Below the pieces are notes generated by a model. The model was not told where the DNA came from. It searched no databases and was given only the letters and a program-made list of their open reading frames with translations. The translations under genes and the position numbers were made by a program. Below are positions 481 to 60,389 of a stretch of 64,000 bases of DNA, piece after piece. The DNA is from Paragordius varius (Eukaryota; Animalia; Nematomorpha). Position 1 is the first letter of the stretch; every line of letters begins with the position of its first letter. The DNA is taken from contig OZ176056.1 of assembly GCA_964247055.1 (NCBI GenBank), positions 2,170,001 through 2,234,000 on the forward strand, in the 5' to 3' direction.

Positions 481-1016
481 CCACCGATTTTCAAAACAAG
501 AGAAGGTTGTAGGTTTTATGTATTCTATTTGTGTCTTATTATTTAAAAAACATTAACTTTAATAAAATGATTGTTGCTTAAATTATATATGCTCATGTTT
601 TAAGCATTTTGTACAATAACGAGAAAAAGCTATTTCACAAATATTAATATTACAAACACAACATGGAAAAATTGAAAAATATTTTTTTAAAAGACTACTC
701 TACTTATTCATAAATTATGATTCCCATAATTATAAAAATAAGCTAAACCAATTTACATCTCTAATTCCCATTTCACAACCCAAAGAGTTAAATAGAAAAA
801 ACAAAAAAAAGAAATGGTTGTTTTTAATTTTTACTTATTGTCTGTGTAATTCAAATTACTGTAAGTTTGATTATACACATTTTAAAAATGTGAAAATGTA
901 AAATAATCATTTTAAACTACCGAAAATGTTCATTAAAAATAAAAACAAGGATTTTTTCATAAGATATCCACCTTATCAAATGACCCCACATGCTCAATGA
1001 AAATGGGCGAACACTG
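481..1016. repeat. Conserved right flank of the satellite arrays, copy 1 (paralog of 38215-38758)
   Basis: Colinear similarity by eye with 38215-38758, e.g. TTTAATAAAATGATTGTTGC, CCAATTTAC.TCTCTAAT, TGTGAAAATGTAAAATAATCATTT and CACCTTATCAAATGACC. Both copies end at AAAATGGGCGAACACT and then diverge. Confidence 0.9.
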
Positions 1017-1039
1017 CAGTGACTTACCGAGCAGGCGCC

Positions 1040-2270
1040 CGGGGCATAAAAACGATCTTGACCCATCGTCGATCGCATATATGTTAAAATAAATTTTAGT
1101 TTGCTGGAGGTTTCAAAACTAGCGACTGACGTTGAAATAGTTAAAAGTATTTGAAGTGCAATCCTTGTATTGGGAAACACCGCCGCATAAAATTATAAAG
1201 GTTAAGAGTTCTAAAGGAGTTTCAGGTTTGACACCTTTTCGACTTAGGAGTACTATCCTACAATCACAAATTTCATTAAATAGATCTGTTCCATTAAAAT
1301 CTCTATTGCAAAATTCGCCTATATATTTACTCTTATTTTTAAATCTTATTGTTATTTATTATCAATATTTTTGATATCTACAAAAATCTATAGTTTTCAT
1401 ATAATTTTAGCTTTTTTATGGCTTCCTCAAAAATTTGATTCCAATATCATTAGTTAAGGATTCAAGGTCCTTAAATGCTTCATTAAAATTAATTTTAGGA
1501 TCTTGCAATCTATGTTAAACCCTATTGATTCTTTTTCGTATTTGCTTGAAAAAAATTAACGTTAGAAATTAAAAACACTCTGGATTAAAACGGATGCCTC
1601 ACTTCTTGTTTCACTAGTATTTGAAGTATTTTTACTTAAATCTCTAATAGCTCTATCAAATCATTTATTCCCTCAACAATGCCATTTGCTTGAATTCTGA
1701 CACTCCATCGGGTTTCAGACTCACGCTTAACAGTTTTTTTAGTTTCTTTTTTAGTATGTCCCATCTAATAGTTGAACGTAAAAAAGATAGATATTTTAAA
1801 TTATTCCGGCGCAGGTCACAACAATAATATCTTGTTTTGATTTTTTCCATTTCAACATTTTATGAAGTATTACAACCAAATGCCCCTTAAAATATCTCAA
1901 AAAATATTTTTAGCGTCAGGCTAAATTTAATGATGTGCAGTTTAAGCCTCTTAGGCACATGATAAAGCAAATAGGTAAAAAATCTCCATATACTTTTCGG
2001 TGACTTTTTTTCCATTAATTTTTAACACTGTGAATACAAAGGCAAATAAATGTGTATTATAATTAAAATCGGATTACAAAGATTTTTATGATATTCTAAT
2101 ATCAGCGCTTCAATTTGAGTTATCCCATTTGGATTATAAAAGTTAACTATAAAAATTATAAGTTTTTTATCTAGAAGAAATATCAAATAATTTTTAGCGT
2201 AACCGATCTCAGAACAGTATGTATCCTAAAAACTCTGGGCTAGAAAACCACGCTAAACCTGCCATCTCGT
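1040..2270 (-). pseudogene. Degenerate hAT (ZMYM1/DUF4371-like) transposase, middle to C-terminal dimerization region
   Basis: ORF 917-1180 FPNTRIALQILLTISTSVASFETSSKLKFILTYMRSTMGQDR matches the hAT dimerization consensus FPN..IALRILLTIP.T.AS.ERSFSKLKLIKTYLRSTM.QERL. Frameshifted upstream pieces: STIRWDILK (~1750), AH(S)LNLA (~1925), EFLGYI (~2230). A hAT-type CAGTG.. terminus lies at 1017. Confidence 0.8.
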
Positions 2271-3047
2271 ACAGAAAATGTAATAAAATGTTAACCATTA
2301 ATGGAGTGACTTGTTGGTATTAAGTATGAAATAAGTGTTTTCTATATTTTAAAAAACTAATTTTTAAGATTTAACACTTTTCTAAAATTTTAAATTATTT
2401 TTTATAGTATATGATTATGGCTTACAAAAATGTTTTCATCTACATGCATAAAATGTAAGAAATGTTTATTTACTGAGGTAACATTCAAAGAACAGCGGTA
2501 TTTTATCAGGGAATATTGTTTCAACAAATAAAAAAAATAAAAGGGGATTTAAATAGTTAAACTAAAATTATGTCATATAGGCATTTATAAATAATTTATT
2601 TCAAACTTAAAAACAATCTTTTCCAGTTTTTGCCAATCGGGTAGATGTATATGTAGAAATGTTTTTTTAAACATAAATTTCCATAAGGTTTTGTGAGCAA
2701 ATTTTTGCCAATCATGATTTTCCGAATATTTCGCGGGGCACACGTGAGGTCTTGGAGGGTTGTTCGTTGGACAACCTTACCTTAAATCAATTATTTGCGA
2801 TGCATGTTATGTGCCATCTCGAAAAGTATTTATAACCATTTATTTTTTAATACCAATGCAGTTTCTGTATTTTACAGGTTATATCTAATATTAACTTACG
2901 GTAACTTCAAACGATCGTCAATTTAAGAAATCTAAACACGTATCAAATATATTTATTGGATAAATAACTTAGTGAATTTTGCTACAATATATAATCTATA
3001 ATTTTTTTATGAAAAATCTTCCAAAAATATTATATATGACAAATAAA

Positions 3048-3169
3048 TTATTCCGGCTTTAGATTTCTAATGGCTTCTTCCAAAACTTCTAAAATTAGAA
3101 ATTAAATACAGTTACATTTATAATTATAATGTTTAACACTGTATGTTATAGTTTAAAATATATTTGTTA

Positions 3170-3202
<33 letters not shown>

Positions 3203-6200
3203 ATTGATATTTCATGATCCTCCAATCCTAATGCATCTAGGATTATTATAAAAAATTGTTTATTTGGTTAAAGTGGAATTTTATTAATCCAGTGTAGTAA
3301 ATAACAAATAAGATAATATATTGAGTATTGTTAAATATTTTTTATATCTTAGGATGTATACTGTAAATAAAACTTCATTGTCAATTTATACCGAGGATTT
3401 CAAATTTTCTAGTTCTTAATTATTAGGAGTTTTTATGTGTGACAGGATTATCAATTTGCTTATATTACAATCGATATAAAAATTAATAAAAATATTTTTA
3501 AAAAATTAAATTATTTTTAAAAAATTTATAAAAAATATATTACTTTCAACTCCTGCATCTGGAAACATGGCACCTTAATTAATATAAAAATAAAGTTATA
3601 ATGCCATATAACCAGATATTTAAATATATTTTAATTTACAATATTTTAATAGAAAAATTTATAATTAATTACGTAATTTGTCAAGTTATTTGATAATTTT
3701 TTTGTGCATTTTATTTAGCAATTAATAGTAATTATATCAAAATTATTTACTTTCATTTGCTTTGTCGATTAAATCTAATTTAGGATAGCATAACTATGAA
3801 AAAATGAAGCCCGCTATATAAGGATCCTTTGTTGTTAAATGGATAAAAAGAATATATTTAAAAATTGAATTTTGGTTTTTATGGATTAACCATTTTTAAA
3901 GTAAATTTATCAAAAATCATATTTTGGTTTTAATATATTTTTTCACGGATATTCTTTCAAATTATAAAATTATAAATATCCGTATCATACTGTAATTATA
4001 TTTTAAATACACAGTAATAATTGGATTATACAGACAAAATGTATTTTCAAAATACAATCATACTTTTTATACCTTGATTTTTCTTATATAAAATATTTAC
4101 ACACCACTGTAAAATATAAAATTGATTGTGTTTCCAATATTCATTAGATAACTTAAAAATAAGATTTAATAGTAAGGTGGCCTTTTAGAAAAAATATCTA
4201 CGTTTTGTACGTGTAATTCCAATTTTAACTGTATTAGTAAAAAACTGATACATAATAAAATAGAAAGACTATTAAAAATTAATTTTAAAAATATAAAAGC
4301 ATTTTAAAGCCTTAATAAACTTTTTTGGGAAGTTTTTGCGTTTTTAAAAAGATAGTTTTTATTTTACCTTGAATAGTGTCCATCATATCTATATAAATAT
4401 TGTTTAAAGCCAAAAATATTATTTTTATATATTAAAATCTGTAAAAAAATTAGCCATGCAAAAAATATACTGCTAATGCGCTCTTTCAAAGCTAAATTTG
4501 AAATATATAATTTATTAATTTGTGAAATTTTCTAATTTTTAGTATTATAAAGCATTTTATGGATATTTTCATGCCGTCTAAATAATTTATAGAAATATTA
4601 AACAAAAGTCAAAAAGGTAATCTAACAAAAATCTTTCTCTAATATAAAAGAGTACTTGAAAAGTACTTTTTAAAATATTTAACAATTTTAATCCTATATG
4701 TGCGGTTGGAAAATCAGCGTGTCTCTGAAACCTAAATGGCTTAAATAAATATATCTTAAAAACCGGCAGTTTTAATAATTATTCGAATTTATTGTTATTA
4801 ATAATTTAGGTGATTTTAAACTAATGTCGTCAATTAATACACAATAATTATTTTGAGCATTATATAAATTTCTTAACTTATCACAAAATTTATCCCAATG
4901 TGGACTCTTATAGTAATCTTTACATACAATTATTTTTTTTATTACACCAATGTTTAATTAATTATTAAAAATTACCAATTTTGGCCCGATCTATATTAAA
5001 TTTAATGATTTAATTATAATTTTATAAATTATATTGCCATAAAAATTACTTATATTTTCTGGACCTAATCACGAAGTAAAAAATTTTAATAATTTTTATA
5101 ATGAAAACTATATATAAAAATATTTTACTAATATTCCGCGTTTCCTCCAAAAAGTTTTTTGAATCTAAATATATATAGGGATAATTTAATAAAGATATTT
5201 AAAAAATAAAATTAAAATTGCTGCAAAATGTAAAATAAAACATAAATAGAATTACGATTAAACCCTAAAATGTATTGAAGATTATAATGTAACGCAAAGC
5301 TATTTTGATTTAAAAATAAAAGGTCATTGATTAATATAAATCAATATATATGCCAAAAATTTAAAAATTTGATGGTATTAAAAACTTTATTAGAGTCTTC
5401 AGACTCCTTGGGAAATACAATAAAATCAAAAAAAAAAATTTTTAAGTTTTTCCGTATTAAATCACATGATTTTATATACCATTTTATAACCAAATGCAAC
5501 TAATTATAGCCATAGGAAAATAAAAATGTTTGTTTTAGTTAAAAATGTTGCGTTTGGTAAAATTGTTACTTTTGACTAAAAATCATATAATTATAATTAG
5601 ACGGGCTATTTGGAAATCAAATTAAATTTTATGAAAATATATCAGCTGCCATAAAGTAATTTTAAAAACCTTATCGATATCCTTATAAATTATTATAAGT
5701 CATACGTTTAGATATAAAACATCAGATTTAAGCTTTTTCGATTTTTATGTTTTGAAGTTTTTTGTTATTACAAATATGGTAAAGCTTTTAAATGTTCTAC
5801 ATTTTAAAAGAGTTAAAACACAAAACATTTGTTTCTCTTGGTTATTTGCGCTTATTTATCTTTTAAGGCGCTGGCCTCTCATAAGGATTTAAGGGAATTT
5901 GAAAGTCAATCGCAGTGGTTTTTCCTTAAAAATTTAAACAGGCTGTATGAAAGCACTTTTAGGGCCGCGGTTTTAATTAATCTATTGGCTTAATACAAAA
6001 ACCTAAGTCTCTTAAAAGCGTACAAGGGGAAATTCACAAACTACGCCAATTAAAAAGAGTGGAGAATTATGAAGACTACTGACCTGATTTATAAAAATTA
6101 GTCAGCAATATAATTACATAGGCAAATCAAGTTTTTAGTAAGACTCTGTATTTATACAAAACTTCTTGAATATTTTTTATTTTTACAAATATTTTGGATC

Positions 6201-9152
6201 ATTACAATTCATTAAAGCTAATGAATAAATTATACATTAACTTTCATCGATCTTCCAATAAATTTTAATTTATAACAGTTGAATTATGGTTTATATTTTA
6301 TAAAACGTATTTTATGAAAAGTCAGTAACCATCTAAGAGAACGGTTCCAATGTATACCGGTATTAAAAGTTATACTATAAGCCAGGTTTTCCAAATTTTA
6401 AGAGATATGCTGTTTATTTTAAATTTTTTACAACCCGATTGTGATTATAAACGAGCAGAAACCATTGAAATTTTGGTTCCACTTTTTTTGACCTGGTTGT
6501 CTAGGCGTTAGTTTACATGTTTTGCCCTTATAATTTTAATTTTTATTAATATAGATTATAAGTAAGACATATACCTTCCATAAGATTGGATCCTTCTGCA
6601 GAGGTAAAATAAATATATTCAATATATAAGTAAATTACTAAATACCTGTATTCAAATTTTCGACATCTGAAATATATGGTTTATATCAATAAAATCAAAT
6701 CGATATATGTGCAAAAATGGTTTTCAAAAATTGCTCAATTAGCTTTAAAATATGTGTTTAAAATATTTTAATATGAAAGAAATTTAGATTTGAAAAACAT
6801 ACGCTCCAATATTTGTCGGCCTATAAAATTAAAGTGAAATAAAATTCTTTTTTTTTAAAAAAAATTAATAATATAATTTTTTTGAATTGTACCTTGAACG
6901 ATTCTGTCATGACTAGTTTTAAATTTTTTGCCTTATGTAAAATATTATGGATGGTTTACTTGGTTGAGGTTCTAAATATGAGAAACGCTAAAGTGATGCA
7001 AAGTTTTTTGGTTACCTTTTTTAAAAAAATATATATTTTTTTTATTAAATGAAGCTTAACTAAAAGGAATTTACGTTCAAACGACTTAAAAAACTAATTA
7101 CTCACTTATGTTCTTAAAGTGCTGAGTACTCAATTTTATTTTTTAAAATTTATTTTATAAATTAACCAAGATTTAATCTCTATATTTAAACAATTTGCAA
7201 AAAAAATTAGCTTTAATATTAATATTACTTTTTTTGGATTAAAATATAAATTATACCGCTTATATCATCGTCAACTACATCAGAGTCTAAATTTAGGGAA
7301 ATATATATTTAAATATATATCCATCAGAACTGAATCAACAAAATTAAAATGGAGTCTCAAGAACTAACTTAATTTCGGCCTTAAATTTTGAATATCAGTC
7401 ACTGACCTCTGATAGGATAATATAAATTAGCCAAATTTTATATAAAAAATTAATATTTTGTGATTATTTTTAAACTTTTATGTGGAATATGGTTTTTTAA
7501 ATTGTCATACATCTTTTTAAAGGTGTCTATTTTGATTGCATTTTAATTAAAAGGTTAAAAAATTATCAGTCTTTTTGGACATCTATTTTTTTTAATTTGG
7601 TTTCATGTTATATAAATGTGATATGGAATCATACATTTCATAATTGATATAATATTTAGCCTACCTAGGGTAAACTGCTCATATGTGTAAAAAATTTGGT
7701 CGCAAAAAAATATATGTATTAAAAAAAATATGCTTATTTAAATTATTTTAATAACTTACAAATCATTAATAAACGTAATATTAATTTAAATTAATACGCT
7801 TGCAAATTTTTAACTAAAAATTTATTTTAATTCAACATCATATGATATTTTTGAATATTTTTAAAAGTGGGAAATGCTAAGGTCATATAAAATAAAATAA
7901 TTTTTTATAAAAATCTACTTCTTTGAAGACCGGATGGTCCAGGTTGGGGTTCTGTGGCCTCTGTTTTTGATATAATTTAAAAAAATTAATATGTATTTCA
8001 TAAAAATAATTTTCCCGTAAAATATTAAAATATATATAAAAATTAAAACCAGATGAGATTTGTGGGGTGAATTCAGTTATGGCATTATCAGAAACTAAAG
8101 AGAAAATGGATAATTAATGAAAATTTATATAATCACAATTGATTTATAATACTATTTCCTACTTCCTTAATATTAGTCTCAAACTTGCATGGACAATAAT
8201 TGATAATGTAATAGAGACTAATTTAAAAAATACCTTCAGTTGATGGTAGATCCACTCTGGGCCCTGATAAAAATTAAATATTTGCTTTTAGTTATAAAGT
8301 AGGATTTTTTGATTTTTGAACATTAACTGCCAAAAATACTTAGGTTAGGGTGTAATACAGACAAAAAAAAGTAAAAAATGTTTCTAAAAATAACGGTAGT
8401 TGAACAAATTTTAAAATTTGTTAATTGCCACCAAAAATTAACACTAACTTGTCATTACCTGGTTCGAATTGAGCCAATTCGCCTTCATTTTCTAGATTTT
8501 TAGATTTATTTTAAATAAACATATAAAAATTTCCAAAATAGATTTTAATTGGTTTGAAATAGTTTAGCGAAGCAAATATTTCAATTAAATAATTTTATAC
8601 AATTTCCAATGTGTTTACCTGTTGTAATATTGAAAAAACCCGAAATTACAAAACAAAAAGTTATTTTTATATGAAACAATTTAATTATTATATATATTAT
8701 TACCAGTATTAGCAAATGTTTCAACCAATTTAGCTGCCTCAGTGATTTCAACTATTTTAAAATAAAATAAATATAAACCAAAGTAAATTTTATAATATAT
8801 GGTTAATTTGATAATTAATTTTTATCATAACATATAATTTTTTGGATGATTAAATTTATATACCTCCATCTACAATATTTATATTTGTAAAAAAAATATT
8901 TGAGTTTTACCTGTGAGTACAGTGGCTACATATTGAAAATATTTAATTATATTTTTAAATTTAAAAATAATAGAAATTATCTTTGAAGTGATCGTTTTTT
9001 AACAAAGAAATTGGTAAAAAATTTATTTTAATAAAATAACAATACAAAGTTGCAAATTCATACAAAAATTAAATCAAAAGGCTAAAGTTTGTTTTTATGG
9101 TTATATATTAGGTTAATAACTTATCAAAACTCTGTTCGTAAGGAAAGAAAAT

Positions 9153-9202
<50 letters not shown>

Positions 9203-10647
9203 GTTATTGCAATTTTTAAAGAACTCTTTTGTCTTTGTAAAAAAAGAAAAATGAAATGTGCTAAAATTATTTTGTAAAAAATCAGAGTCCTCATACATTC
9301 GTCCCGCCTTAAATGGCCTTCACAGGAAACTATAGTAACGCGCTAAAAAATAAGCTCAATTTCCTATTTTTATACTAGAGTCTTGGCTTTAAATAATAGT
9401 TTTGACTAGTTGTTAGGTTTTTGGGGACCTCATAAAGAGCAAAAAGCAATAAACTCAAATAAAATATAATTAAAACAAATTTATAGTTCTTGCAAATGTA
9501 ATTTTGTTTATTCTTTAACGAATTTCTCGGTATGGTAATGTTGTCGGTTTAGAACGTATATACTGTTAATATACAAGTTTAAATGGGGTAACTTTAAATG
9601 CGATCAAAGAAAATAAGTAATGACTGGACTGAAACAATATTTACATATTTTTACTTCATAAAATAAAAGATTCTAGCCAATAATTTTTAATTAAAATAGG
9701 GAGAGTTAGGATCAAATATATACATTAGATATATTCATACAAGCCAATATAATAAATTCATATCTTAAAAAGGTCAAATCAGTTAACCTCTTTGAAACAA
9801 AACATATTCTTTATTGTTGTAAGACTTAATTCTGTGAAACTATACGGACAAAACGTACAAAAAAGGATACCTCACAAATTAAAACATTCGTTTGCCTTGA
9901 TTTTTCCCATTTTAATTTTATGTTTTTATTTAGTTTTTTAAGAATTTAAATCTCAATTTATCATTTTGTAAACGACAAAAGGCTGAGTTGATTTTCAATG
10001 TCAACATTTTAAGAAAGTGTTGTCTCTTATAGAAAGCCCTTCTTTGAGTTTTTCCGTTTTGTTTGTATGATTATGGTAAAATATTAATTTGAAAATAAAA
10101 TTACATTTTACATTATAAAAATACCCGAACTTTTATCCGGTAATATTAAAATATTTGCAATATAAATTAAATCATTATCGTTTACCTGCCACTGAAAATA
10201 TTAAATAATAACTTTATAAAAAATATTTTTATGATATTTTTCGAATTGGTAAATTTTAACCAAAAGAATTACACATTGCTGAGCCTAATATTTATCATTT
10301 TAAACATTAATAATAACTAGTTTGAAATATGGATGTAAAATTTAAAATTTTTTTGTCCATAACGTATAAACAAATTTAAAGTTATAAATAAATTAAATGA
10401 ATTTTACAATAAAATAACTCACCAAAAAAATGTAAATAATTTATCAATATTGGATAAAATATAATTTAGTTTTGATTATTTCTATATTTTTTTATTAATT
10501 TCAACGGTTAAAATTACTAACTTTTTTGTTTGATATAAAGCAATTATGAAGAAATACTTGTGGAGCTAAAGCACCTAAGAAGTTTAAAAGCAAAAATATA
10601 TTTCGAGAGATACAAATATGTCGTACCAATTCCGATCGCTGCAACAA
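3048..10647 (-). CDS. Candidate micro-exon gene (partial model), acidic/disordered protein of unknown function; may be more than one gene
   Basis: GC-richer islets flanked by AG and GT on the minus strand, mostly 3n long and phase 1-1: 10647-10627, 10191-10186, 9342-9297 (0-1), 8925-8911, 8869-8864, 8751-8704, 8491-8459, 8263-8234, 8094-8050, 7960-7919, 7286-7257, 6971-6960, 6820-6803, 6666-6646, 6595-6575, 5164-5129, 5064-5050, 4990-4976, 4491-4471, 4388-4368, 4228-4211, 4106-4101, 3774-3751, 3573-3544, 3236-3201; terminal exon 3088-3048 (EVLEEAIRNLKPE*). The 9342-6575 chain reads without stops: RVTIVSCEGHLRRDESTVLTDGVEITEAAKLVETFANTENEGELAQFEPGPRVDLPSTEVSDNAITEFTPQISSEATEPQPGPSGLQRNSDVVDDDISEPQPSRQILEHVENLNTEGSNLME. 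The start codon and several linking exons are unresolved. Confidence 0.6.
3172..3199. repeat. (TA)n microsatellite directly after a putative splice donor
   Basis: Perfect TA run; on the minus strand it begins at the GT of the donor at 3200. Confidence 0.95.
5776..6082 (+). CDS. Candidate ~50-aa protein (MALASHKDLREFESQSQLYESTFRAASLKSVQGEIHKLRQLKRVENYEDY*) with short introns
   Basis: GC-richer island. Model: ATG 5776-5778, intron 5779-5867, exon 5868-5914, 27-nt intron 5915-5941, exon 5942-5969, 38-nt intron 5970-6007, exon 6008-6082 ending in TGA. No homolog recognised. Confidence 0.3.
9157..9198. repeat. (TA)n microsatellite
   Basis: Perfect TA run; it produces the spurious IYIYIY ORFs in the track. 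Confidence 0.97.
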
Positions 10648-10794
10648 CTAATTTAAATCAATGATAAAATAAATTAGTAATTAAATTTTTAAAACAAAAC
10701 TCTTCGATATTTAAACAAAAATTTTAAAATAACTGGTGTAATTATTCTTTTTAGGCTTAAATAATGATGTAATCCTTAATATAATGTTTTATCC

Positions 10795-12165
10795 AGGGGC
10801 GTATCCTGCACCGCAATCCTTCAAAACATTTTTGTGAATTATTACACTAGTCGACAAGCATTTTTGAGCACCACCACTCAAAATTTTAAATTATGACTAA
10901 TTTCAGTGTTCTAAAACCGAATCTAAATTTTGATCCCCCCAATCAGAATTTTGAGATATTATTGGCTTTTTAATTATTCAAAAACAAGAGAAAATCAAGA
11001 GAAAATTAAATATAAATTTATAATAAATGGTTATTATATTATAAAATTAATTTCATTTAATAAAGCTATCTTTTAAATATAAATATGTTATTTAAATATC
11101 AGGGAGAAAATAATAGTACGGATATAAACGTCAAAATTTAGTCTTTTTTAGTTAATCTTAAACACGTACAAAGTTATATTAAAAAAATACTAAAAGATGC
11201 ATTCTATGGTTTAAACCTTTGGCTTTCAGATAGGCTATATTTATTTTGTTGGATTTTGTTATTTCTAGGTATTTTCTATTCGGCTGACTCTTACAAAAAA
11301 TCTTCTTACTTATACCTAGTGAATATTATTTATCTCTAAAATGATTGGCTTTTATTTGAATTTAGATGGATGTTTGGCAGCCACTTTTATTACCTGGATT
11401 ATGGTAATATACCATAATAATATTATAAACTGCAAGCATTTGAACTTCTCTAATCTTCTTATACAATTACATGGTCAAATCTGTCTAACTCTATTCTGTG
11501 AATTGGTTAATTTAACATGTCAATATAGATTTTGCTGAAGTTACTACTTTATATTGAACCTCTCTCCTACCGGGCTTTAAACACCTCATTATTGTATACC
11601 TTTGCCATATCTGGCATTATAGGATTGCTTCGGGGATTTTTGCAGGGCTTATGCAAGCCACCGGGATATACCCACACACCATATATTATCCTTTTGATTT
11701 TTAATAATCTTTGGCTCTTAGCAATATATTTTAATTCGATATTCTATAAGTTTTACAAAATATTTTATTTAATGCATATAATTTTTAATTAATATATCCA
11801 ATAAATTGATATTTATTTATTGTATATTGTCCATTTCTTTTACATTTTCTGCACAGTCTTCGTTTAATCTTCTGTAGTATCGTATACAGGGTCTGGTATA
11901 TTTGAATCATTTATGCATTTTAGTTCTATTTTAAAAAAAACCTGGCTTTGGAATACCACTTCTTTTGACTTGCTCGTTTAAATATTTAAATATAAGTGCA
12001 CTAGGAATATTTATTTTATAAAATTAAATACAAAATTTAAAATAAAATTTTTAAAAAATCCTATCGGGGGCCTCATATTTTAATTTTGTTTTGGCCTTTC
12101 CATCCCATTAGGTAACAGAAAATGCAAAAAATGGGGTGGTGCAAAACCTTGTTGACCAGTGTTAT
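10795..12165 (+). mobile_element. ~1.35-kb non-autonomous DNA element, copy 1 (inverted copy at 51558-52700)
   Basis: Starts CAGGGGCGTATCC (hAT-like end). Segments ACACTAGTCGACAA, TTATGACTAATTTCAGTGTT, CATTCTATGGTTTAAACCTT, CCATATCTGGCAT and GGGGTGGTGCAAAACCTTGTTGA recur as reverse complements at 51558-52700. Confidence 0.8.
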
Positions 12166-12252
12166 CAATTAAAATTATATGAATGGCAAAAATATGTCCA
12201 TTTATTTTATTCAAATTTTTTGGAAAAACTTTGCTAAATTGGTGAATAATTA

Positions 12253-12298: not shown

Positions 12299-13419
12299 CG
12301 AATGCTATTAATTCAAAAATGCGTCTCATAAAGCCATTTGTTATAGTTACCCCTGTTTTTTACCCATCTTATCTAATTATTGGTTTGTATAAATTGTGAG
12401 TCAATCAAAATCATTTTATTATATCTTAAAATGCAAATTTAATGTTTTTATTTTTATTGATTAATTCCCTAATTTTGAACTTTTCTTTAAGTTAAAATTC
12501 TGGTAAAATATATTGACAATAAATGCCATGAGGTCCAATTATTTGTCCAAACTGTCCCATTTAAGATGTATAAAATAAATGAAATATGAATAAAGATAGT
12601 ATACCAGGAGAAGCAGCTAAAAATTTTTTCCATAAATGACAGAATCCTTTTTATATTAAATATATTTTCATACTTGTGTCCGACCTTTGTAAATTGGGCT
12701 TGATTTGTTGAGCCTTTCATATATCTTTTAAGAATTATAATATTACTATAAAGTTTTATTTAATGTCAATTTCATATCACTGAATTTATTTCAAACGTTT
12801 GGCTATGATTTTCAAAATTTTATGCTACTAAAATTCTAAGCAGGGAAAAATATCAGTTAAAATCTTATAAATATAAAAAATGTAAAAGCAAATTGAGTTT
12901 TTTTGAATAATATGATGCAATATCATCAAAATTAATAATAAATTTATTTATGAATTTTCGTTAGATTCCTCTAACTTCTTCGGACCAACACAAAAATTAA
13001 GCCTGATTATTTATGCATTTTCAAATATAAATACCGTTTTATTAGACTCTTTCTTTATATTCGCAGCTATATTTAGAATGAATAAGATTTCTAATTGCTA
13101 TTTAAAAACATCACATTAAAATCTTTAACCATTTTAACAACATAAAAATGATTTAACATTGTATTCCGAATCGGTGAATGCAAATTTTATTTTTTCTTAA
13201 TTATTATCGTTAAGCTTTTTTATTTCAAGCGGACGCTCTTCATTCCTAACTATGAGCTTTAAAATACTGCCCAACTGCATTTTCCAAATACATAAACAAA
13301 TTTTTTTATAATGATCGTTGGTTAACATTGTGTAAAAATATAAAAACCTTTAGACTAAAAAATGAGGTAATCAATTATTTAACATAAAAATAAGATTTAC
13401 AATTGAAAGGCAGTTAATA

Positions 13420-13591: not shown

Positions 13592-14456
13592 ATAAAAATT
13601 TATATGTATTCTAAATTATCTATTTTTTTAAAGCATGTTCAAATACTTATAATTTAGATAGAATAAAACCCACACGCTTTTACTTGTTTCACCTGGCCCT
13701 GCCTAAAAAAGTATGATTAATTTTTTTGTAAAGCCTAAATTTATATTGTACAGTAAAAATCGGAATTTTGAGACAAAACCTGAAAACATAAAGACAAATA
13801 TTTTTTTGAAAAGCAATCATATTTTGAAATCCTCTTTATAAGTAGAATATATAAATTGTGTTACGAATTATCTTTATTTCATACTTTGCAGTTTGATATA
13901 ATGAGTTATAATTAAAATAATCAAGTCTTAAAAAAACGATAGCCGTGTTGAAATAATTTGTATTTATATTTTTACATTTTGTCGGTATAATTTCAATTTT
14001 CACTGTAATTATATATTATGCAGAACAGTTTTCAATTACAAGACCTGATAATAATATTTATCCATCAACTGAGTTTCATTTGAATCTGAAAAAATAAAAC
14101 AGATGATACAATTATTTCCTTATTGAGTTTGACCCGGCTTATAATTCGCGCTTGTGATTATTAAAAATAACCAGTCAATACTTAATAAATATTTTAGAAA
14201 TACAAATATGAATTTGACATATGGTAAATTTAATTTTATGTCCAAATAAATATATATAATCATATATATGGTCATAAAAAAATTGAATTTTCACTCTCTA
14301 TGCCATTTAACTCTTTATATTATTAAAGCGGGAATTGCATTTATAAGCAATAAGATCGTTATTTTTTTATCGGTCAAACCAAAATTTCTTATATATGGTG
14401 TAAATTAAACAATGAATCACTACAATACGTAGTTTAATATCATTTTATCATAAAAC

Positions 14457-14726: not shown

Positions 14727-16363
14727 CATTAAACCAAATGAAAATATTGCATATGCCATTTACAATTTAACTTCACTCCTGAACACTTAAATCACCCTAA
14801 AAATAAATTAGGTGTTTTCGGGCTAATATAACTCCTCATTTATATGAAATATATCTTATTAGCTTAGTTTATTTCTTTTCAATATTATTATAATTACAAA
14901 ATATCATTCTTTCAAATATAAAAAAATATAAGGTTTTAATCTTACACTTAATTTATTTAAGGGTGTTGAATTGTTCGAGGGCGAATTTGTTTGTTTAAGG
15001 GGGAATTTGAATTGTAAATGGTATATATAAAGATTATATATTGGATTCCAAAATATATTACTTATTGCAAATTCAGTAACAGACACGTTGGGTATTTTAG
15101 TGAGATTCTGCAAATTCAAAAATTTGAATTAAATAAATAATGATTGCCCAAATATAATTATGCTAACAAAAAAGGAATTATTTTTAATTATAACTTGTAT
15201 ATTTTCTGAAATTCCTAATAATAAATATGTACAAAAATATAAATTATAAATCGATTGAAACAGCAAAACATTTAAAAATTCTCATTTTCCTTTTTAAAAG
15301 TCTCTTATAAAGTATGATTCAGAATCATACGATGTCCGCTTTATAATGGTATTTTAAAAATATGGAATAAAGATTTGACAATGACTTAAAAAACCACGAA
15401 CTATAAAAGTTTTTTTTTTCATAAAATTTTGCGGAAAAGTCGAAACAAAAAATTGCTTATTTGAAACCAATTTTAAAATAATTCTAGTATAAACCATTGT
15501 AATGCATATTTAGAGTTTTTTTCGACAAAAGCATAATAAATTTAATTGTTTGTTGACATGGTTTAAACCACTCTCAATGACAAATGGTTTTAACTTATCA
15601 TTGTTAAGAGAAAATAAACAACAATAAACGTTTTTAAAAATTGTATATAATGCACCATTTTATCCATCCTAATTTTTATATTTTTTTTACGCTGAGGACG
15701 GACACACGTTAAAATGTCCGAAACCGTTCGAATTTTATTTATTCTATGATACGTTTTAAATAAATTTCCATATTTTTAAAAGCATATATGTGTACTTTGT
15801 TCAATGTCCGTTCTGGATTGATTAGTATTAAGTGAATAAATGTCATCTTTGATCTCAATAACTAATATTTACAATAAAATGTTAACTATATGTAAAAAAT
15901 ATCAATTGACTTTGGCTTATATATTTTTTTGAAAAAAAATTTATTCATATTAGTTAATCATAAATATTAATATTCTGAAGTAATTTAACAAATTATAATC
16001 AGGTAAAAATATAATAATATGTAAGTGTATATCTTTACCGAATACAATTTGTTTACGATATGCTATATAATTTTATAAAAAAATTATTAAAATTCGTAAA
16101 GCACAGATCAATATATTAAACCGGTCGATTGGCTTTATAATACCATTATTTGCAAACTTTTATCAATATTTAAAAAATATACCATTGCTCTTCAAATTTA
16201 TTCTTAAAAACTTTAAATTCACCCTCAAGCATTTTAAATAACTCTAAAAATTGTGTTTTTGAATATCTTAAATTACATATAGTTTTGTAAAATAAAATTT
16301 TAATATTATTATTACATACGGAAAAACAATGCCATGGCATTGAGAAAGATACCATTCAATAAA

Positions 16364-16596
16364 TACAGTCATGTATCCTTTATTTTACCAAACATTTATT
16401 TTTTCGTTAAATGGGTTTAAATATTTGGTAAAGAATGGGAAAAACAAGAGATCTATGGTAATTCTTATACTTTTTTTGATGAATTTGATATTGTTAATAC
16501 CATAGAGCTCTCGTTTTTTCAATTCGTTAACAAATATTTATACCCATTTAACGAAAAAAAATAAATTTTTGATAAAATAAACGATACAAGATTGTA
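16364..16596. mobile_element. Foldback MITE (near-perfect ~105-bp arms)
   Basis: TACAGTCATGTATCCTTTATTTTACC...GATCTATGGTA is the reverse complement of TACCATAGAGCTC...GATACAAGATTGTA with few mismatches; TA at both ends. Confidence 0.85.
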
Positions 16597-17864
16597 AGTT
16601 CACTCATAATTTTTTAGGAGTATTTTAATTGCATGAAATCATCAAGGTAAGGAGGTGTGAACTCCATCAAATCACTTTCAATATTACAAATTAATAAAAT
16701 AATGCTATCAATTAAAAATTTTCAAATTTTTTTACAATTAATATAACTTAAATAAAATAATTATATTTAAATAACATTTACAATTTTTTCATATTTTAAG
16801 CAAATAATTTAGTTAAATATATATTTTCTCTATCAAATACGAAATTAAAGGTTAATCACAAATTATTGTTTATTCTAAAGAAATTTTAAACCGACTAGCC
16901 TAAAATACTAAAATATACGAATGCCATTTATCACATAATGTTCAGGTCATGATGATGAATCGTTTATATAATGATTGATTTTACACATCGATTTAGTTAT
17001 ATATATTTAGTATTATAATATTTCAAATTCATATTTTGTTGGAAATATAGAGAGGCTCTAATTTAGAAATTTACTGCATAGCTAAAGTCTAAAAAGGTTA
17101 TTTGTCGGATATGAAGTAGAGACATATTATTAGTGTTAAAGGTATCTAATAAGTTTACTGACTGCTTTTAGTATATTTATTTTCAAACATTGTAGAGGTG
17201 TAAAGGTAAAAAGGCGAATTATTGCAAGCTTGAATTACAATCCTTACTCTATTAACTAATTAAAAGACTTTAACACGCAAAAATGTAAGTTTTATTGTAA
17301 AAATCTAAGAATCTGTAAAATATTTTTAAAATTAATTGACATAATATTTAAAGCAGTCAAAAAGGTTTTCCTAAAACTACAAATCGGCGAAACTTACCTG
17401 TCGTTTGACTTAGTAGAATACATGCTATAAAATTATAAATTAATGTTCGCATAATAGGAATCATCATCATCGGAATATTTAATAAAATACTTTTTAAAAA
17501 AATATTTGGATATTCACGTTAAAAAACATTTTATAAGGTCAGTTATCTATAGTACAAGGTACGCTCCAGCTACAATGTAATATATAAACAAGATAACAAA
17601 CATCATTTCTTAATAGTTATAACAGCCTAAGCAAAACAAAGTTAAATTACGTTTAGGATTAAAAATTATTTTGCATAAATACTTAGTGAATAATTTAATT
17701 TTAAAGGGATTTGTAAATCCGTGCGAATAACAAGTATTTAAGCAACAATATATGTTTTTAAAATGAATAAATGTATAATTTGAAGAAAAAAACAACCTTT
17801 TTCACATTATTTCAGGTTAAATAAAATATATAAATACTTATTCCTGTAATATTTTAATTTTAAA

Positions 17865-18082: not shown

Positions 18083-18093
18083 TTATATATATA

Positions 18094-19004
18094 TACTGTG
18101 TGCAAAAAAGAGGTCATTTTGATTTAACGAAATTTTTTTTTAATGAGATAGCTTATGACCAGCGTAGCCGCAAAAATTTTTATTTGTTGACAACCTAGTT
18201 TTTGAGATATAGAAAGAAAATCGAAATCGGGCAAAAATGGAAAAATAAGGATAATTAAGGATAATTAAAAAATAATGATAAAATTTGAAATATTACGGTT
18301 TATTATCATTTTAGGAGATATTTTCAATATATCAACCAACAATCCTTACAATTTCCTGTAACAAGTCTGTATGACAAATTAATATTTGTGTTGGCATTTG
18401 TACGGATTGTTGGTTGATATTCCACTAATTTTCAATCCTATCATGCATAAATTAATACTTAAAAATTCCCACTCATTTAAGAATTCAAAATAAAACAGTA
18501 TAAATTTTTATACACTCATAAACCAGATGACAAAAAAGTGCAAAAATAAAAAACAATATTTTTGGTTTTATTTTGATATAGAAGTTTATTTTACTGAATA
18601 AAATATAAATGTTAAGATTATAATAGTGAGTTTAGGTAGTAAATAATTAAAAAAATATATTTTAATATAGTTTCATTAAAATTTTGTCTTTTAAGTGTGA
18701 TAAAAAAAACGCCATCTTTTGACCCTGAAATTTTATAGAAACCCAAACTATATGATTTTAGGCTATTTATATATTGAAAACCTAAAATGATAATAAACCA
18801 TAATATTTCAAATTTTATTATTTTTTTTTGAATTATCATTAATTATCCTTAATTTTCACTTTTTGCCCGATTTCAATTTTCTCTCAATATTTTAAAAACT
18901 AGGTTGTCAACAAATAAAAATTTTTGCGGCAAATGAATACGCTGGTCATAAGCTATCTCATAAAAAAAAATTTTTGCGTTAAAATTTTTTTTCCATACAG
19001 TGTA
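18094..19004. mobile_element. Non-autonomous TIR element with ~220-bp TIRs and a nested small inverted repeat
   Basis: GAGATAGCTTATGACCAGCGT..GCCGCAAAAATTTTTATTTGTTGACAACCTAGT (left) and its reverse complement at 18897-18960; TA-rich termini. Internal ATATCAACCAACAATCC / GGATTGTTGGTTGATAT at 18328-18420. Confidence 0.85.
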
Positions 19005-19499
19005 TATATATAAGATATTATGGAAAAACGACGTTTTTGATAAATCAAAGGATGAAATTATCAAAAATATTTAAACTAGTATATTTTAATTTTGGAATTT
19101 AAATCATATATTTAATAATTGTTTGCATTGGTTTGTAAAAATTAAAAATCTTAAGGAATTGCCGGGATCAGTCCACCAAGAACACATTCTTTGTGGGACA
19201 TTTTAACCCCTTAAAAATAAAATAAGATTTGGTCCTCGCATGATATCAAATTAAAAACCAATATCCACATTACTATGGAAAGCTGGACATACATGACGAA
19301 CGTTCTATAAATCCTTTAAAAATTTCTCCAAACAAATATGTCAGACAAAATACCCAACTTTCTACTATTTTTAACAAAATTAATTCTGAAATGCCTCCCA
19401 TTGGCAATACGCCAAAAACTCTCCGGTGATAATTTTTCTCACATCAGAATTTAAATTAAATCTTTGTTTGCTTCCAAATTGAATCAAATTTTGTAAAAA

Positions 19500-20626: not shown

Positions 20627-23600
20627 TATCCACTCGTCACCGAAGTCCGCAATTCAGTAACAAGATAGATGGTGTTTTAAGTTGTTAACGAGTTGAGAAT
20701 TGATTGAAAACAGATTTTGTCGGACGGTTTATTGTAAGATTTGGCTAACTTAAGTTTACTGTAAAGGACTAAACAGATTAATGTATTATTGTGTACATCA
20801 ACTCATCACCGAAGCCCCAATTCAGTAACAAGATAGATGGTGTTTGAGTTGTTAACGAGTTGAGAATTATATGAAAACAGATTTTGTCGGACGGTTTATT
20901 GTAAGATTTGGCTAACTTAAGTTTACTGTAAAGGACTAAACAGATTAAAGTATTATTTTGTACATCCACTCATCACCGAAGCATTCAGTAACAAGATAGA
21001 TGGTGTTTTGGTTGTTAACGAGTTGAGAATTGATTGAAAACAGATTTTGCCGGACGGTTTATTGTAAGATTTGGCTAACTTGAGTTCTGTAAAGGACTAA
21101 ACAAATTAAAGTATTATTGTGTACATCCACTCATCACCGAAGCCCCAATTCAGTAACAAGATAGTTTTGGTTGGTAACGAGTTGAGAATTGATTGAAAAC
21201 AGATTTTGCCGAAAGGTTTATTGTAAGATTTGGCTAACATGAGTTTACTGTAAAGCAACAGATTAAAGTATTATTGGTACCTCCACTCATCACTGAAGCC
21301 ACCATTCAGCAACAAGATAGATGGTGTTTTAGTTGTTAACAAGTTGAGAATTGATAGAAAACAGATTTTGCCGGACGGCTTATTGTGACACTTGGCTAAT
21401 TTGATAAAGGACTAAACAGTTAACGTATTATTGTGTACATCCACTCATCACTGAAGCCCCAATTCAGTAACAATATAGATGGTGTTTTGGCTGTTAACGA
21501 GTTGAGAATTGATTGAAAACAGATTTTGCCGGACGGTTTATTGTAAGATTTGGCTAACCTGAGTTTACTGTAAAGACAAAACAGATTAAGTTATTTTGAG
21601 CATCCACTCATCACCGAAGCCCCAATTCAGTAACAAGATAGATGGTGTTTTGGCTGTTAACGAGTTGAGAATTGATTGAAAACAGATTTTGCCGGACGGT
21701 TTATTGTAAGATTTGGCTAACATGAGTTTACTGTAAAGGAACAGATTAAAGTATTATTGGGACATCCACTCATCACCGAACCCCCTATTCAGTAACAAGA
21801 TAGATGGTGTTTTGGTTGTTAACGAGTTGATAATTGATTGAAAACAGATTTTGCCGGACGGTTTATTGTAAGATTGAGTTTACTGTAAAGGAACAAATTA
21901 AATTATTATTGGTACATCCACTCATCACCGAAGCCACCATTCAGCAACAAGATAGATGGTGTTTTAGTTGTTAACAAGTTGAGAATTGACAGAAAAATAA
22001 TTTTGTCGGACGGCTTATTGTAACACTTGGCTAATTTGATAAAGGACTAAACAGTTAACGTATTATTGTGTACATCCACTCATCACTGAAGCCCCAATTC
22101 AGTAACAATATAGATGGTGTTTTGGCTGTTAACGAGTTGAGAATTGATTGAAAACAAATTTTGCCGAACGGTTTATTGTAAGACTTGGCTAACTTGAGTT
22201 TACTGTAAAGCCTAAACAGATTAATTTATTTTGTGCATCCACTCATCACCGAAGCCCCAATTCAGTAGCAAGATAGATGGTCTTTTGGTTGTTAACGAGT
22301 TGAGAAATGATTGAAAACAGATTTTGCCGGACGGTTTATTGTAAGACTTGGCTAACTTGAGTTTACTGTAAAGCCTAAACAGATTAATTTATTTTGTGCA
22401 TCCACTCATCACCGAAGCCCCAATTCAGTAACAAGATAGATGGTGTTTTGGTTGTTAACGAGTTGAGAATTGATTGAAAACAGATTTTGCCGGACGGCTT
22501 ATTGTAACACTTGGCTAATTTGATAAAGGACTAAACAGATTAACGTATTATTGTGTACATCCACTCATCACCGAAGCCCCAATTCAGTAACAAGATAGAT
22601 GGTGTTTTGGTTGTTAACGAGTTGAGAATTGATTGAAAACAGATTTTGCCGGACGGTTTAAGATTTGGCTAACTTGAGTTTAATGTAAAGGACTAAACAG
22701 ATTAAAGTATTATTGTGTACATCCACTCATCACCGAACCCCCAATTCAGTAACAAGATAGATGGTGTTTTAGTTGTTAACAAGTTGAGAATTGATAGAAA
22801 ACAGATTTTGCCGGACGGCTTATTGTAACACTTGGCTAATTTGATAAAGGACTAAACAGATTAACGTATTATTGTGTACATCCACTCATCACCGAAGCCC
22901 CAATTCAGTAACAAGATAGATGGTGTTTTGGTTGTTAACGAGTTGAGAATTGATTGAAAACAGATTTTGCCGGACGGTTTATTGTAAGATTTGGCTAACT
23001 TGAGTTTAATGTAAAGGACTAAACAGATTAACGTATTATTGTGTACATCCACTCATCACCGAAGCCCCAATTCAGTAACAAGATAGATGGTGTTTTGGTT
23101 GTTAACGAGTTGAGAATTGATTGAAAACAAATTTTGCCGAACGGTTTATTGTAAGATTTGGCTAACTTAAGTTTACTGTAAAGGCTAAACAGATTAAGTT
23201 ATTTTGTGCATCCACTCATCACCGAAGCCCCAATTCAGTAACAAGATAGATGGTTTTTTGGTTGTTAACGAGTTGAGAATTGATTGAAAACAGATTTTGC
23301 CGGACGGTTTATTGTAAGATTTGGCTAACTTGAGTTTAATGTAAAGGACTAAACAGATTAAAGTATTATTGTGTACATTCACTCATCACCGAACCCCCAA
23401 TTCAGTAACAAGATAGATGGTGTTTTGGTTGTTAACGAGTTGAGAATTGATTGAAAACAGATTTTGCCGGACGGTTTAAGATTTGGCTAACTTGAGTTTA
23501 ATGTAAAGGACTAAACAGATTAAAGTATTATTGTGTACATCCACTCATCACCGAACCCCCAATTCAGTAACAAGATAGATGGTGTTTTAGTTGTTAACAA

Positions 23601-26600
23601 GTTGAGAATTGATAGAAAACAGATTTTGCCGGACGGCTTATTGTAACACTTGGCTAATTTGATAAAGGACTAAACAGATTAACGTATTATTGTGTACATC
23701 CACTCATCACCGAAGCCCCAATTCAGTAACAAGATAGATGGTGTTTTGGTTGTTAACGAGTTGAGAATTGATTGAAAACAGATTTTGCCGGACGGTTTAT
23801 TGTAAGATTTGGCTAACTTGAGTTTAATGTAAAGGACTAAACAGATTAAAGTATTATTGTGCACATCCACTCATCACCAAACCCCCAATTCAGCAACAAG
23901 ATAGATGGTGTTTTAGTTGTTAACAAGTTGAGGATTGATAGAAAACAGATTTTGCCGGACGGCTTATTGTAACACTTGGCTAATTTGATAAAGGACTAAA
24001 CAGATTAACGTATTATTGTGTACATCCACTCATCACTGAAGCCCCAATTCAGTAACAAGATAGATGGTGTTTTGGTTGTTAACGAGTTGAGAATTGCTTT
24101 AAAACAGATTTTGCCGGATGGTTTATTGTAAGATTTGGCTAATTTGAGTTTACTGTAAAGGCTAAACAGATAGAGTTATTTTGTGCATCCACTCATCACC
24201 GAAGCCCCAATTCAGTAACAAGATAGATGGTCTTTTGGTTGTTAACGAGTTGAGAATTGATTGAAAACAGATTTTGCCGGACGGTTTATTGTAAGATTTG
24301 GCTAACTTGAGTTTACTGTAAAGACTAAACAGATTAAGTTATTTTGAGCATCCACTCATCACCGAAGCCCCAATTCAGTAACAAGATAGACGGTGTTTTG
24401 GTTGTTAACGAGTTGAGAATTGATTGAAAACAGATTTTTCCGGACGGTTTATTGTAAGATTTGGTTAACTTAAGTTTACTGTAAAGGCTAAACAGATTGA
24501 GTTATTTTGTGCATCCACACATCACCCAAGCCCCAATTCAGTAACAAGATAGATGGTCTTTTGGCTGTTAACGAGTTGAGAATTGATTGAAAACAGATTT
24601 TGCCGGACGGTTTATTGTAAGACTTGGCTAACTTGAGTTTACTGTAAAGACTAAACAGATTAAGTTATTTTGTGCATCCACTCATCACCGAAGCCCCAAT
24701 TCAGTAACAAGATAGATGGTCTTTTGGTTGTTAACGATTTGAGAAATGATTGAAAACAGATTTTCCCGAACGGTTTATTGTAAGATTTGGCTAACTTGAG
24801 TTTACTGTAAAGACTAAACAGATTAAGTTATTTTGAGCATCCACTCATCACCGAAGCCCCAATTCAGTAACAAGATAGACGGTGTTTTGGTTGTTAACGA
24901 GTTGAGAATTGATTGAAAACAAATTTTGCCGAATGGTTAATTGTAAGACTTGGCTAACTTGAGTTTATTGTAAAGGACTAAACTGATTAAAGTATTATTG
25001 TGCACATCCACTCATCACCAAACCCCCAATTCAGCAACAAGATAGATGGTGTTTTAGTTGTTAACAAGTTGAGGATTGATAGAAAACAGATTTTGCCGGA
25101 CGGCTTATTGTAACACTTGGCTAATTTGATAAAGGACTAAACAGATAAACGTATTATTGTGTACATCCACTCATCACTGAAGCCCCAATTCAGTAACAAG
25201 ATAGATGGTGTTTTGGTTGTTAACGAGTTGAGAATTGATTGAAAACAGATTTTGCCGGACGGTTTATTGTAAGATTTGGCTAACTTGAGTTTTTTGTAAA
25301 GGACTAAACAGATTAAAGTATTATTTTGTACATCCACTCATCACCGAAGCCCCAATTCAGTAAAAGATAGATGGTGTTTTGGTTGTTAACGAGTTGAGAA
25401 TTGATTGAAAACAGATTTTGCCGGACGGTTTATTGTAAGATTTGGCTAACTTGAGTTTAATGTAAAGGACTAAACAGATTAAAGTATTATTGTGCACATC
25501 CACTCATCACCAAACCCCCAATTCAGCAGCAAGATAGATGGTGTTTTAGTTGTTAACAAGTTGAGGATTGATAGAAAACAGATTTTGCCGGACGGCTTAT
25601 TGTAAGATTTGGCTAACTTGAGTTTTTTGTAAAGGACTAAACAGATTAAAGTATTATTTTGTACATCCACTCATCACCGAAGCCCCAATTCAGTAACAAG
25701 ATAGATGGTGTTTTAGTTGTTAACAAGTTGAGAATTGATAGAAAACAGATTTTGCCGGACGGCTTATTGTAACACTTGGCTAATTTGATAAAGGACTAAA
25801 CAGATTAACGTATTATTGTGTACATCCACTCATCACCGAAGCCCCAATTCAGTAACAAGATAGATGGTGTTTTGGTTGTTAACGAGTTGAGAATTGATTG
25901 AAAACAGATTTTGCCGGACGGTTTATTGTAAGATTTGGCTAACTTGAGTTTAATGTAAAGGACTAAACAGATTAAAGTATTATTGTGCACATCCACTCAT
26001 CACCAAACCCCTAATTCAGCAACAAGATAGATGGTGTTTTAGTTGTTAACAAGTTGAGGATTGATAGAAAACAGATTTTGCCGGACGGCTTATTGTAACA
26101 CTTGGCTAATTTGATAAAGGACTAAACAGATTAACGTATTATTGTGTACATCCACTCATCACTGAAGCCCCAATTCAGTAACAAGATAGATGGTGTTTTG
26201 GTTGTTAACGAGTTGAGAATTGCTTTAAAACAGATTTTGCCGGATGGTTTATTGTAAGATTTGGCTAATTTGAGTTTACTGTAAAGGCTAAACAGATTGA
26301 GTTATTTTGTGCATCCACTCATCACCGAAGCCCCAATTGAGTAACAAGATAGATGGTCTTTTGGTTGTTAACGAGTTGAGAATTGATTGAAAACAGATTT
26401 TGCCGGACGGTTTATTGTAAGATTTGGCTAACTTGAGTTTACTGTAAAGACTAAACAGATTAAGTTATTTTGAGCATCCACTCATCACCGAAGCCCCAAT
26501 TCAGTAACAAGATAGACGGTGTTTTGGTTGTTAACGAGTTGAGAATTGATTGAAAACAGATTTTGCCGGACGGTTTATTGTAAGATTTGGTTAACTTAAG

Positions 26601-60375: not shown

Positions 60376-60389
60376 TAAAATCTACTAAA

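What the first reader, a model, noticed from the sequence alone, without database searches (positions are those of the whole stretch)
3048..10647. Candidate MEG-like micro-exon gene: ~24 symmetric phase-1 exons of 6-48 nt, invisible to ORF calling
Seen: in an otherwise ORF-less 7.6 kb, short GC-richer islets are repeatedly bracketed by AG and GT on the minus strand only. Examples are ttttcag|TGGCAG|gtaaac (10191-10186), attgtag|ATGGAG|gtatat (8869-8864) and ctctgcag|AAGGATCCAATCTTATGGAAG|gtatat (6595-6575). Most lengths are multiples of 3 (6, 12, 15, 18, 21, 24, 30, 33, 36, 42, 45, 48). Joined in phase 1 they give a stop-free acidic S/T/P/E/D-rich peptide with an internal echo (EPQPGPS, EPQPSRQ). 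A hydrophobic VAAIGIGALA stretch lies near the 5' end. Established: schistosome micro-exon genes are built from symmetric micro-exons and encode secreted, splice-variable proteins. Inference: this could be an independent MEG-like protein-diversification system in another animal. Caveat: I chose the exons by eye, which biases towards 3n lengths, and some linking exons (5499-5256, 4917-4878, 10574-10558) are asymmetric.
Basis: partly seen in the sequence, partly recalled or inferred. Interest (0 to 1): 0.85.

Follow-up and report, generated by a model that had tools for sequence, protein, structure and literature searches.

The report
Hidden micro-exon gene, likely secreted
An AT-rich animal genome (probably a horsehair worm's) very probably hides a real gene cut into 20-33 tiny frame-neutral pieces, built like the micro-exon genes of flukes and aphids and likely encoding a small acidic secreted protein; no RNA data could show that it is spliced or makes variants.

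Summary
A scan blind to length and frame finds 19 exon candidates on the minus strand, 18 with 3n lengths (p=3e-8), against 0 of 9 on the plus strand. The candidates show codon periodicity when read in phase 1 (p=1e-8), and the top 16 are all stop-free in that phase. I count 18 confident and up to 13 weaker phase-1 exons, plus a terminal exon (3088-3048) and a poly(A) signal.

Corrections: 5499-5256 is not an exon, asymmetric linkers are not needed, and the EPQP echo is not significant. The finding has no start codon. A signal-peptide-like phase-1 first exon at 17452-17398 is the best candidate, which would make the gene 14.4 kb and 183-292 aa.

The model meets the published structural definition of a micro-exon gene and the bicycle-gene structure score, but has no CYC motif. 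This scan noted at least ten similar genes elsewhere in this genome; I found no paper on such genes in Nematomorpha.

The parts
17398..17452 (-). Candidate first coding exon, 55 nt, signal-peptide-like (MRTLIYNFIACILLSQTT), ends in phase 1; alternative ATGs at 17470, 17467, 17464
   Evidence: full AG|GTAAGT donor; the only signal-like phase-1 ATG exon between 10.6 and 20.6 kb in the scan; link to the array is inferred
16223..16243 (-). Weak candidate symmetric exon, 21 nt
   Evidence: region not enriched over background
16039..16062 (-). Weak candidate symmetric exon, 24 nt
13684..13698 (-). GC-rich candidate exon with unclear boundaries (13702 or 13698 to 13693, 13684 or 13670)
12605..12616 (-). 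Confident symmetric phase-1 exon, 12 nt, upstream of the finding
   Evidence: score 10.1
10627..10647 (-). Confident exon, 21 nt, hydrophobic (VAAIGI)
10518..10574 (-). Exon with certain acceptor and uncertain donor: 17 nt (to 10558, asymmetric) or 57 nt (symmetric)
10273..10284 (-). Weaker exon, 12 nt (or 10 nt if it restores frame after the 17-nt form)
10186..10191 (-). Confident exon, 6 nt
8911..8925 (-). Confident exon, 15 nt
8864..8869 (-). Confident exon, 6 nt
8704..8751 (-). Confident exon, 48 nt, amphipathic-helix-like
8459..8491 (-). Confident exon, 33 nt
8234..8263 (-). Confident exon, 30 nt
8050..8094 (-). Confident exon, 45 nt (GTT donor)
7919..7960 (-). Confident exon, 42 nt; in-frame alternative donor at 7931
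7369..7401 (-). Weaker exon, 33 nt; peptide echoes the last exon
7257..7286 (-). Confident exon, 30 nt, acidic
6960..6971 (-). Weaker exon, 12 nt (EPQP)
6893..6931 (-). Weaker exon, 39 nt (alternative acceptor 6912 gives 20 nt)
6803..6820 (-). Confident exon, 18 nt
6646..6666 (-). Confident exon, 21 nt
6575..6595 (-). Confident exon, 21 nt
5491..5499 (-). Doubtful exon (9 nt, or 20 nt to 5480)
5256..5264 (-). Weaker exon, 9 nt
5129..5164 (-). Weaker exon, 36 nt, amphipathic-helix-like
5050..5064 (-). Weaker exon, 15 nt
4976..4990 (-). Confident exon, 15 nt
4885..4917 (-). Doubtful exon (33 nt symmetric, or 40 nt to 4878)
4471..4491 (-). Weaker exon, 21 nt
4368..4388 (-). Confident exon, 21 nt
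4202..4228 (-). Weaker exon, 27 nt (or 18 nt)
4101..4106 (-). Fairly confident exon, 6 nt
3751..3774 (-). Weaker exon, 24 nt
3544..3573 (-). Confident exon, 30 nt (or 15 nt from the in-frame acceptor at 3558)
3201..3236 (-). Confident exon, 36 nt
3048..3088 (-). Terminal coding exon, 41 nt with TAA, entered in phase 1, amphipathic helix
   Evidence: sequence
2952..2957 (-). AATAAA poly(A) signal about 90 nt after the stop

Best explanation
An intact, lineage-specific protein-coding gene on the minus strand, probably 17452 to 3048. A signal-peptide exon ending in phase 1 is spliced onto 19-32 internal micro-exons, all entered and left in phase 1, and then onto a short terminal exon. The product (about 183-292 aa) is a secreted, acidic, nearly cysteine-free protein: a Gly/Ala/Val-rich hydrophobic segment, a short amphipathic helix, a disordered Pro/Ser/Thr/Glu linker and a helical tail. 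Most likely it acts as an adhesive or host-interface secretion of a parasitic worm. The uniform phase most likely arose because only frame-neutral exons can be gained or lost inside a phase-1 intron behind a signal peptide, helped by a codon bias that puts AG mostly at phase 1. Skipping of any exon is tolerated, so some variation is likely, but one dominant isoform is the default expectation. Shown: coding exons, phase, open frame, 3' end. Inferred: 5' exon, secretion, splicing, origin, role.
For: 3n enrichment, strand asymmetry and phase-1 codon periodicity. No internal stop in either model; exon GC 0.43 against 0.22 for the region; 18 of 19 donors GTA; D+E 16-21% and one Cys; middle third predicted disordered. 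Only 1 of 190 possible skip junctions creates a stop in the confident set. Signal-like first exon with full consensus donor and matching phase. Phase-1 introns are known to be in excess right after signal peptides (PMC7259759). 55-61% of exon-internal AG sites lie at phase 1, which helps but cannot alone give 20 of 20 (p=5e-5). Exons are mostly unrelated to each other, which fits piecemeal gain better than recent tandem duplication.
Against: No RNA evidence. The candidate first exon is 4.8 kb from the next confident exon, the stretch between them shows no excess of symmetric exons, and signal-like ATG exons also occur by chance elsewhere in the window. A rival signal-like exon at 17606-17563 ends in phase 2. 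No homologue could be tested. The organism is not identified by my own tests: the neighbouring aldo-keto reductase has only 29% matches, to nematode and insect proteins.
Confidence: 0.55

Rival explanations
1. A true MEG-type diversification system: exons are skipped combinatorially to give a pool of near-identical secreted proteins, and phase symmetry is kept by selection for that variation at the host interface.
For: Nearly all skip junctions are stop-free. Many exons carry in-frame alternative sites. Asymmetric exons are not above background. Schistosome MEGs with this architecture do skip exons (PMC4015677; PMC4350168).
Against: No isoform data. In-frame alternative acceptors follow from codon composition alone. 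Aphid bicycle genes have the same phase pattern, and the paper describing them has no occurrence of 'alternative splicing' or 'isoform'.
Confidence: 0.27
2. A real but constitutively spliced membrane-anchored or structural protein (for example cuticle or surface coat) whose 5' end lies elsewhere; the VAAIGIG stretch is a signal anchor or membrane segment.
For: The hydrophobic stretch reaches 1.7-1.9 on a 19-residue Kyte-Doolittle window. The link to the 17452 exon is unproven. Earlier scan notes call some similar genes in this genome membrane proteins (unchecked).
Against: The hydrophobic stretch is marginal for a membrane helix and depends on which small exons are used; the 17452 exon matches in phase and has the strongest donor.
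Confidence: 0.12
3. A recently dead copy (pseudogene) of such a gene, for example cut off from its 5' end by the repeat insertion at 10841-12190.
For: A dispersed repeat sits between 12616 and 10647. A possible 12-nt exon at 8630-8619 has a good donor but no AG acceptor. Earlier notes point to duplicated relatives in this genome.
Against: All confident exons are open with canonical sites, periodicity is strong, and the stop and poly(A) signal are in place.
Confidence: 0.05
4. Chance AG...GT islets in AT-rich DNA picked by eye.
For: AG...GT windows are plentiful (776 on minus, 747 on plus), and some of the 13 weaker exons may be chance.
Against: Length-blind and frame-blind scan, strand control, shuffles and periodicity each reject it at p of about 1e-6 to 1e-8.
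Confidence: 0.01

Closest known systems
Flatworm micro-exon genes (MEGs) of Schistosoma, Echinococcus and Hymenolepis
   Same: Most of the coding region lies in very small 3n, symmetric exons; probable signal peptide; small product without a known domain; invisible to ORF calling (PMC4350168, PMC7653826, 10.1101/2023.06.21.545858).
   Different: Probably an ecdysozoan, whereas MEGs are described as restricted to flatworms. Introns here are shorter (median 124-261 nt, down to 28-41 nt, against 0.1-5 kb). Exon skipping and gland expression are not shown. No evidence of homology.
Aphid bicycle and megacycle genes
   Same: Many micro-exons, almost all starting at codon position 2 (their 'exon phase 2' equals intron phase 1 here); the published structure classifier scores this model above 0.9999 against a cut-off of 0.72 (PMC9168663).
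   Different: No pair of C-Y-C motifs (one Cys, no CxC). The classifier was trained on aphids and measures structure, not ancestry. Different lineage.
Class 1-1 modular extracellular genes of animals (signal peptide followed by a phase-1 intron)
   Same: Phase-1 intron directly after a signal-peptide exon, followed by 1-1 exons (PMC7259759).
   Different: Exons here encode 2-19 residues, not folded domains, and are mostly unrelated to each other.

Membership tests
MEG, structural definition (PMC7653826) | At least seven exons | tested here: met
   21 (confident) to 34 predicted exons; predicted from DNA only
MEG, structural definition (PMC7653826) | [quoted passage not shown] | tested here: met
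   19 of 21, or 32 of 34
MEG, structural definition (PMC7653826) | [quoted passage not shown] | tested here: met
   Seven successive confident exons from 8925 to 7919
Schistosome MEG | Most of the coding region (up to 75%) in small symmetric exons | tested here: met
   83% in exons up to 51 nt; 58-63% in exons up to 36 nt
Schistosome MEG | N-terminal signal peptide; secreted or anchored product | tested here: inconclusive
   Signal-like phase-1 first exon at 17452-17398 by a hydropathy rule; SignalP not available; link to the array unproven
Schistosome MEG | Protein variants produced by exon skipping | not testable with these tools
Schistosome MEG | Expression in glands or host-exposed epithelia | not testable with these tools
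   No expression data
Schistosome MEG | Sequence homology to a flatworm MEG family | not testable with these tools
   No internal exon reaches the 20-residue minimum of the protein tools; the joined search was left out by operator rule
Aphid bicycle genes | Almost all internal exons start at codon position 2 | tested here: met
Aphid bicycle genes | Gene-structure classifier score above 0.72 | tested here: met
   Above 0.9999 with the published coefficients
Aphid bicycle genes | Pair of C-Y-C motifs | tested here: not met
   One Cys and no CxC in either model; not filed as a bicycle gene
Aphid bicycle genes | Salivary-gland expression | not testable with these tools
   No RNA data

The most novel reading that the evidence does not exclude
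One member of a large, independently evolved micro-exon gene system in horsehair worms, in which combinatorial skipping of phase-1 cassettes diversifies secreted host-interface proteins. It would be a further convergent origin after flatworm MEGs and aphid bicycle genes, in a genome whose spliceosome also handles introns of about 22-30 nt.
Probability: 0.25. Interest if true: 0.8.

Novelty: new variant of a known kind. Interest (0 to 1): 0.52.

Why it matters
Genes of this design are missed by gene finders, so a whole class of secreted proteins may be absent from the annotation of this animal. In flatworms and aphids the same architecture marks proteins that act on the host. If this is a horsehair worm, a parasite whose secreted proteins are little described in the papers I could search, the exon map gives exact junctions to test. 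A further independent origin would also let one ask whether uniform phase-1 micro-exons are selected for splice variation or are a by-product of how secreted genes gain exons.

Tried and rejected

The joined frame was used only inside a local script to count stops and composition. Exon-by-exon protein searches were impossible because no internal exon reaches 20 residues. One exon (24 nt of 7960-7919) has no exact match in metagenome contigs. The signal-like first ORF has no Pfam match.

No second copy of the gene lies in this window (local tblastn; repeats). Recent tandem exon duplication is not supported: DNA p=0.38, best peptide echo p=0.043 uncorrected. Codon bias towards AG at phase 1 is real but insufficient alone. 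The dynamic-programming parse upstream of 12616 was unstable, so I do not trust exons there.

Organism identification through the neighbouring aldo-keto reductase failed. The original MEG paper (DeMarco 2010) is not held; definitions come from papers that cite it. None of the papers listed for Nematomorpha plus micro-exons linked the two topics; the Gordionus genome paper has no occurrence of 'exon' or 'intron'.

Full report
Setting. The window is AT-rich animal DNA, with a 163-bp satellite of 108 copies at 20628-38187, dispersed repeats, and no ORF of 80 residues or more inside 3048-10647. Earlier scan notes call the organism a horsehair worm. My own test gave only 29% matches to nematode and insect aldo-keto reductases, which fits a divergent ecdysozoan and identifies nothing. 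A published Gordionus genome has 26.9% GC (10.1101/2023.06.26.546503), which is compatible but proves nothing.

The observation. The three quoted exons are exact. To remove the by-eye bias I scored every AG...GT window of 6-60 nt with fixed splice matrices and a GC term, ignoring length class and frame. In 3000-10700 the minus strand gives 19 candidates, 18 of 3n length (binomial p=3.4e-8). The plus strand gives 9, none 3n (Fisher p=1.4e-6). Shuffles give 1-2 on average and never more than 6, and tiles away from the locus give at most 6. Phase is an independent check: 16 of the top 16 are open in phase 1 against 12 and 9 in the other phases, and codon positions show GC 0.54/0.43/0.28 with 37% G at position 1 (p=1e-8). 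A simpler second rule finds 17 exons that are 3n and open, where about 2 are expected, and 2 non-3n ones where about 4 are expected.

Corrections. 5499-5256 is not an exon (244 nt, 10 stops in the phase-1 frame). The other 'linking' exons have symmetric alternatives, and whether 10574 ends at 10558 or 10518 is open. The EPQP echo is not above chance. The best echo is between exon 7401-7369 and the last exon (p=0.043, uncorrected).

The gene. A self-trained parse recovers the same run of phase-1 exons at every penalty tried. I count 18 confident exons inside the finding, one more at 12616-12605, and 13 weaker ones with lower GC and weaker periodicity, some probably false. The array ends in a 41-nt exon with TAA at 3048 and an AATAAA at 2957. 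There is no start codon inside the finding. Upstream, 17452-17398 reads as a typical signal peptide (basic residue, hydrophobic core, small residues at the cut) and ends in phase 1 on a full AG|GTAAGT donor, one of three GGTAAGT sites on that strand. The link is inferred: the 4.8 kb between it and 12616 has no excess of symmetric exons, and signal-like exons also arise by chance. With it, the protein has 183-292 residues. The array-encoded part has D+E 16-21%, S+T+P 19%, one cysteine, a hydrophobic Gly/Ala/Val-rich start, a disordered middle third, and amphipathic helices at 8751-8704, 5164-5129 and the C-terminus.

How it most likely works. Shown: coding exons in one phase, open frame, intact 3' end. 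Inferred: the transcript is spliced to a secreted acidic protein that acts outside the cell, most plausibly at the host or environment interface. On origin, phase-1 introns are in excess right after signal peptides (PMC7259759), and inside such an intron only 3n, stop-free exons can be gained or lost, so every new exon is class 1-1. Codon usage here also places 55-61% of internal AG sites at phase 1, which helps but cannot give 20 of 20 alone (p=5e-5). Exons are not recent copies of each other. Skipping is tolerated (1 of 190 junctions makes a stop), but tolerance is not use. I give 0.55 to a secreted protein with a dominant isoform, 0.27 to functional combinatorial skipping, 0.12 to a constitutive membrane or structural protein, 0.05 to a pseudogene and 0.01 to chance.

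Comparison. The model meets the operational MEG definition used for tapeworms (PMC7653826). The functional hallmark of schistosome MEGs, variants by exon skipping, could not be tested. It shares the exon phase of aphid bicycle genes and passes their structure classifier (PMC9168663), but lacks the CYC pair, so it is not a bicycle gene. It is built like these families; membership by descent is unsupported.

One exon pattern is absent from metagenome contigs, and no second copy lies in the window.

Novelty. The scan has noted at least ten genes of this design elsewhere in this genome, two of similar size 150 kb and 866 kb before this window (unchecked, possibly paralogues). I found no paper describing micro-exon genes in Nematomorpha. 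Verdict: a real gene, a new variant of a known architecture in a probably new lineage, with the exciting part (splice diversification) untested. Interest 0.52.

Noticed in passing
window 49150-50790 (+): Aldo-keto reductase gene (PF00248) with candidate GT-AG introns of 22-32 nt (49225, 49333, 50281, 50526); best relatives only 29% identical.
   Followed up: partly
   Followed up: partly
window 8619-8630 (-): Exon-like 12-nt islet with a good donor and in-frame length but no AG acceptor: a dead exon, a non-canonical site or an assembly error.
   Followed up: partly
window 17563-17606 (-): A second signal-peptide-like ATG exon, ending in phase 2, just upstream of the preferred first exon; could be an alternative start, using the acceptor at 17424.
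   Followed up: partly
window 20628-38187 and 3-479: Satellite of about 163-167 bp, 108 copies, with a further stretch of the same family at the window start.
   Followed up: no
window 10841-12190 and 51533-52698: Two inverted copies (74-82% identity) of a dispersed repeat of about 1.3 kb; one lies inside the inferred intron 12604-10648.
   Followed up: partly
window 16364-16596 and 18083-19013: Palindromic, MITE-like elements with long inverted arms.
   Followed up: no
window 48699-49028 (-): 109-residue ORF with no Pfam match, head-to-head with the aldo-keto reductase gene.
   Followed up: no
window 60348-62030 (+): Broken non-LTR retrotransposon (RVT_1 match) in several frames; a hAT transposase remnant lies at about 917-1700 (-).
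   Followed up: no
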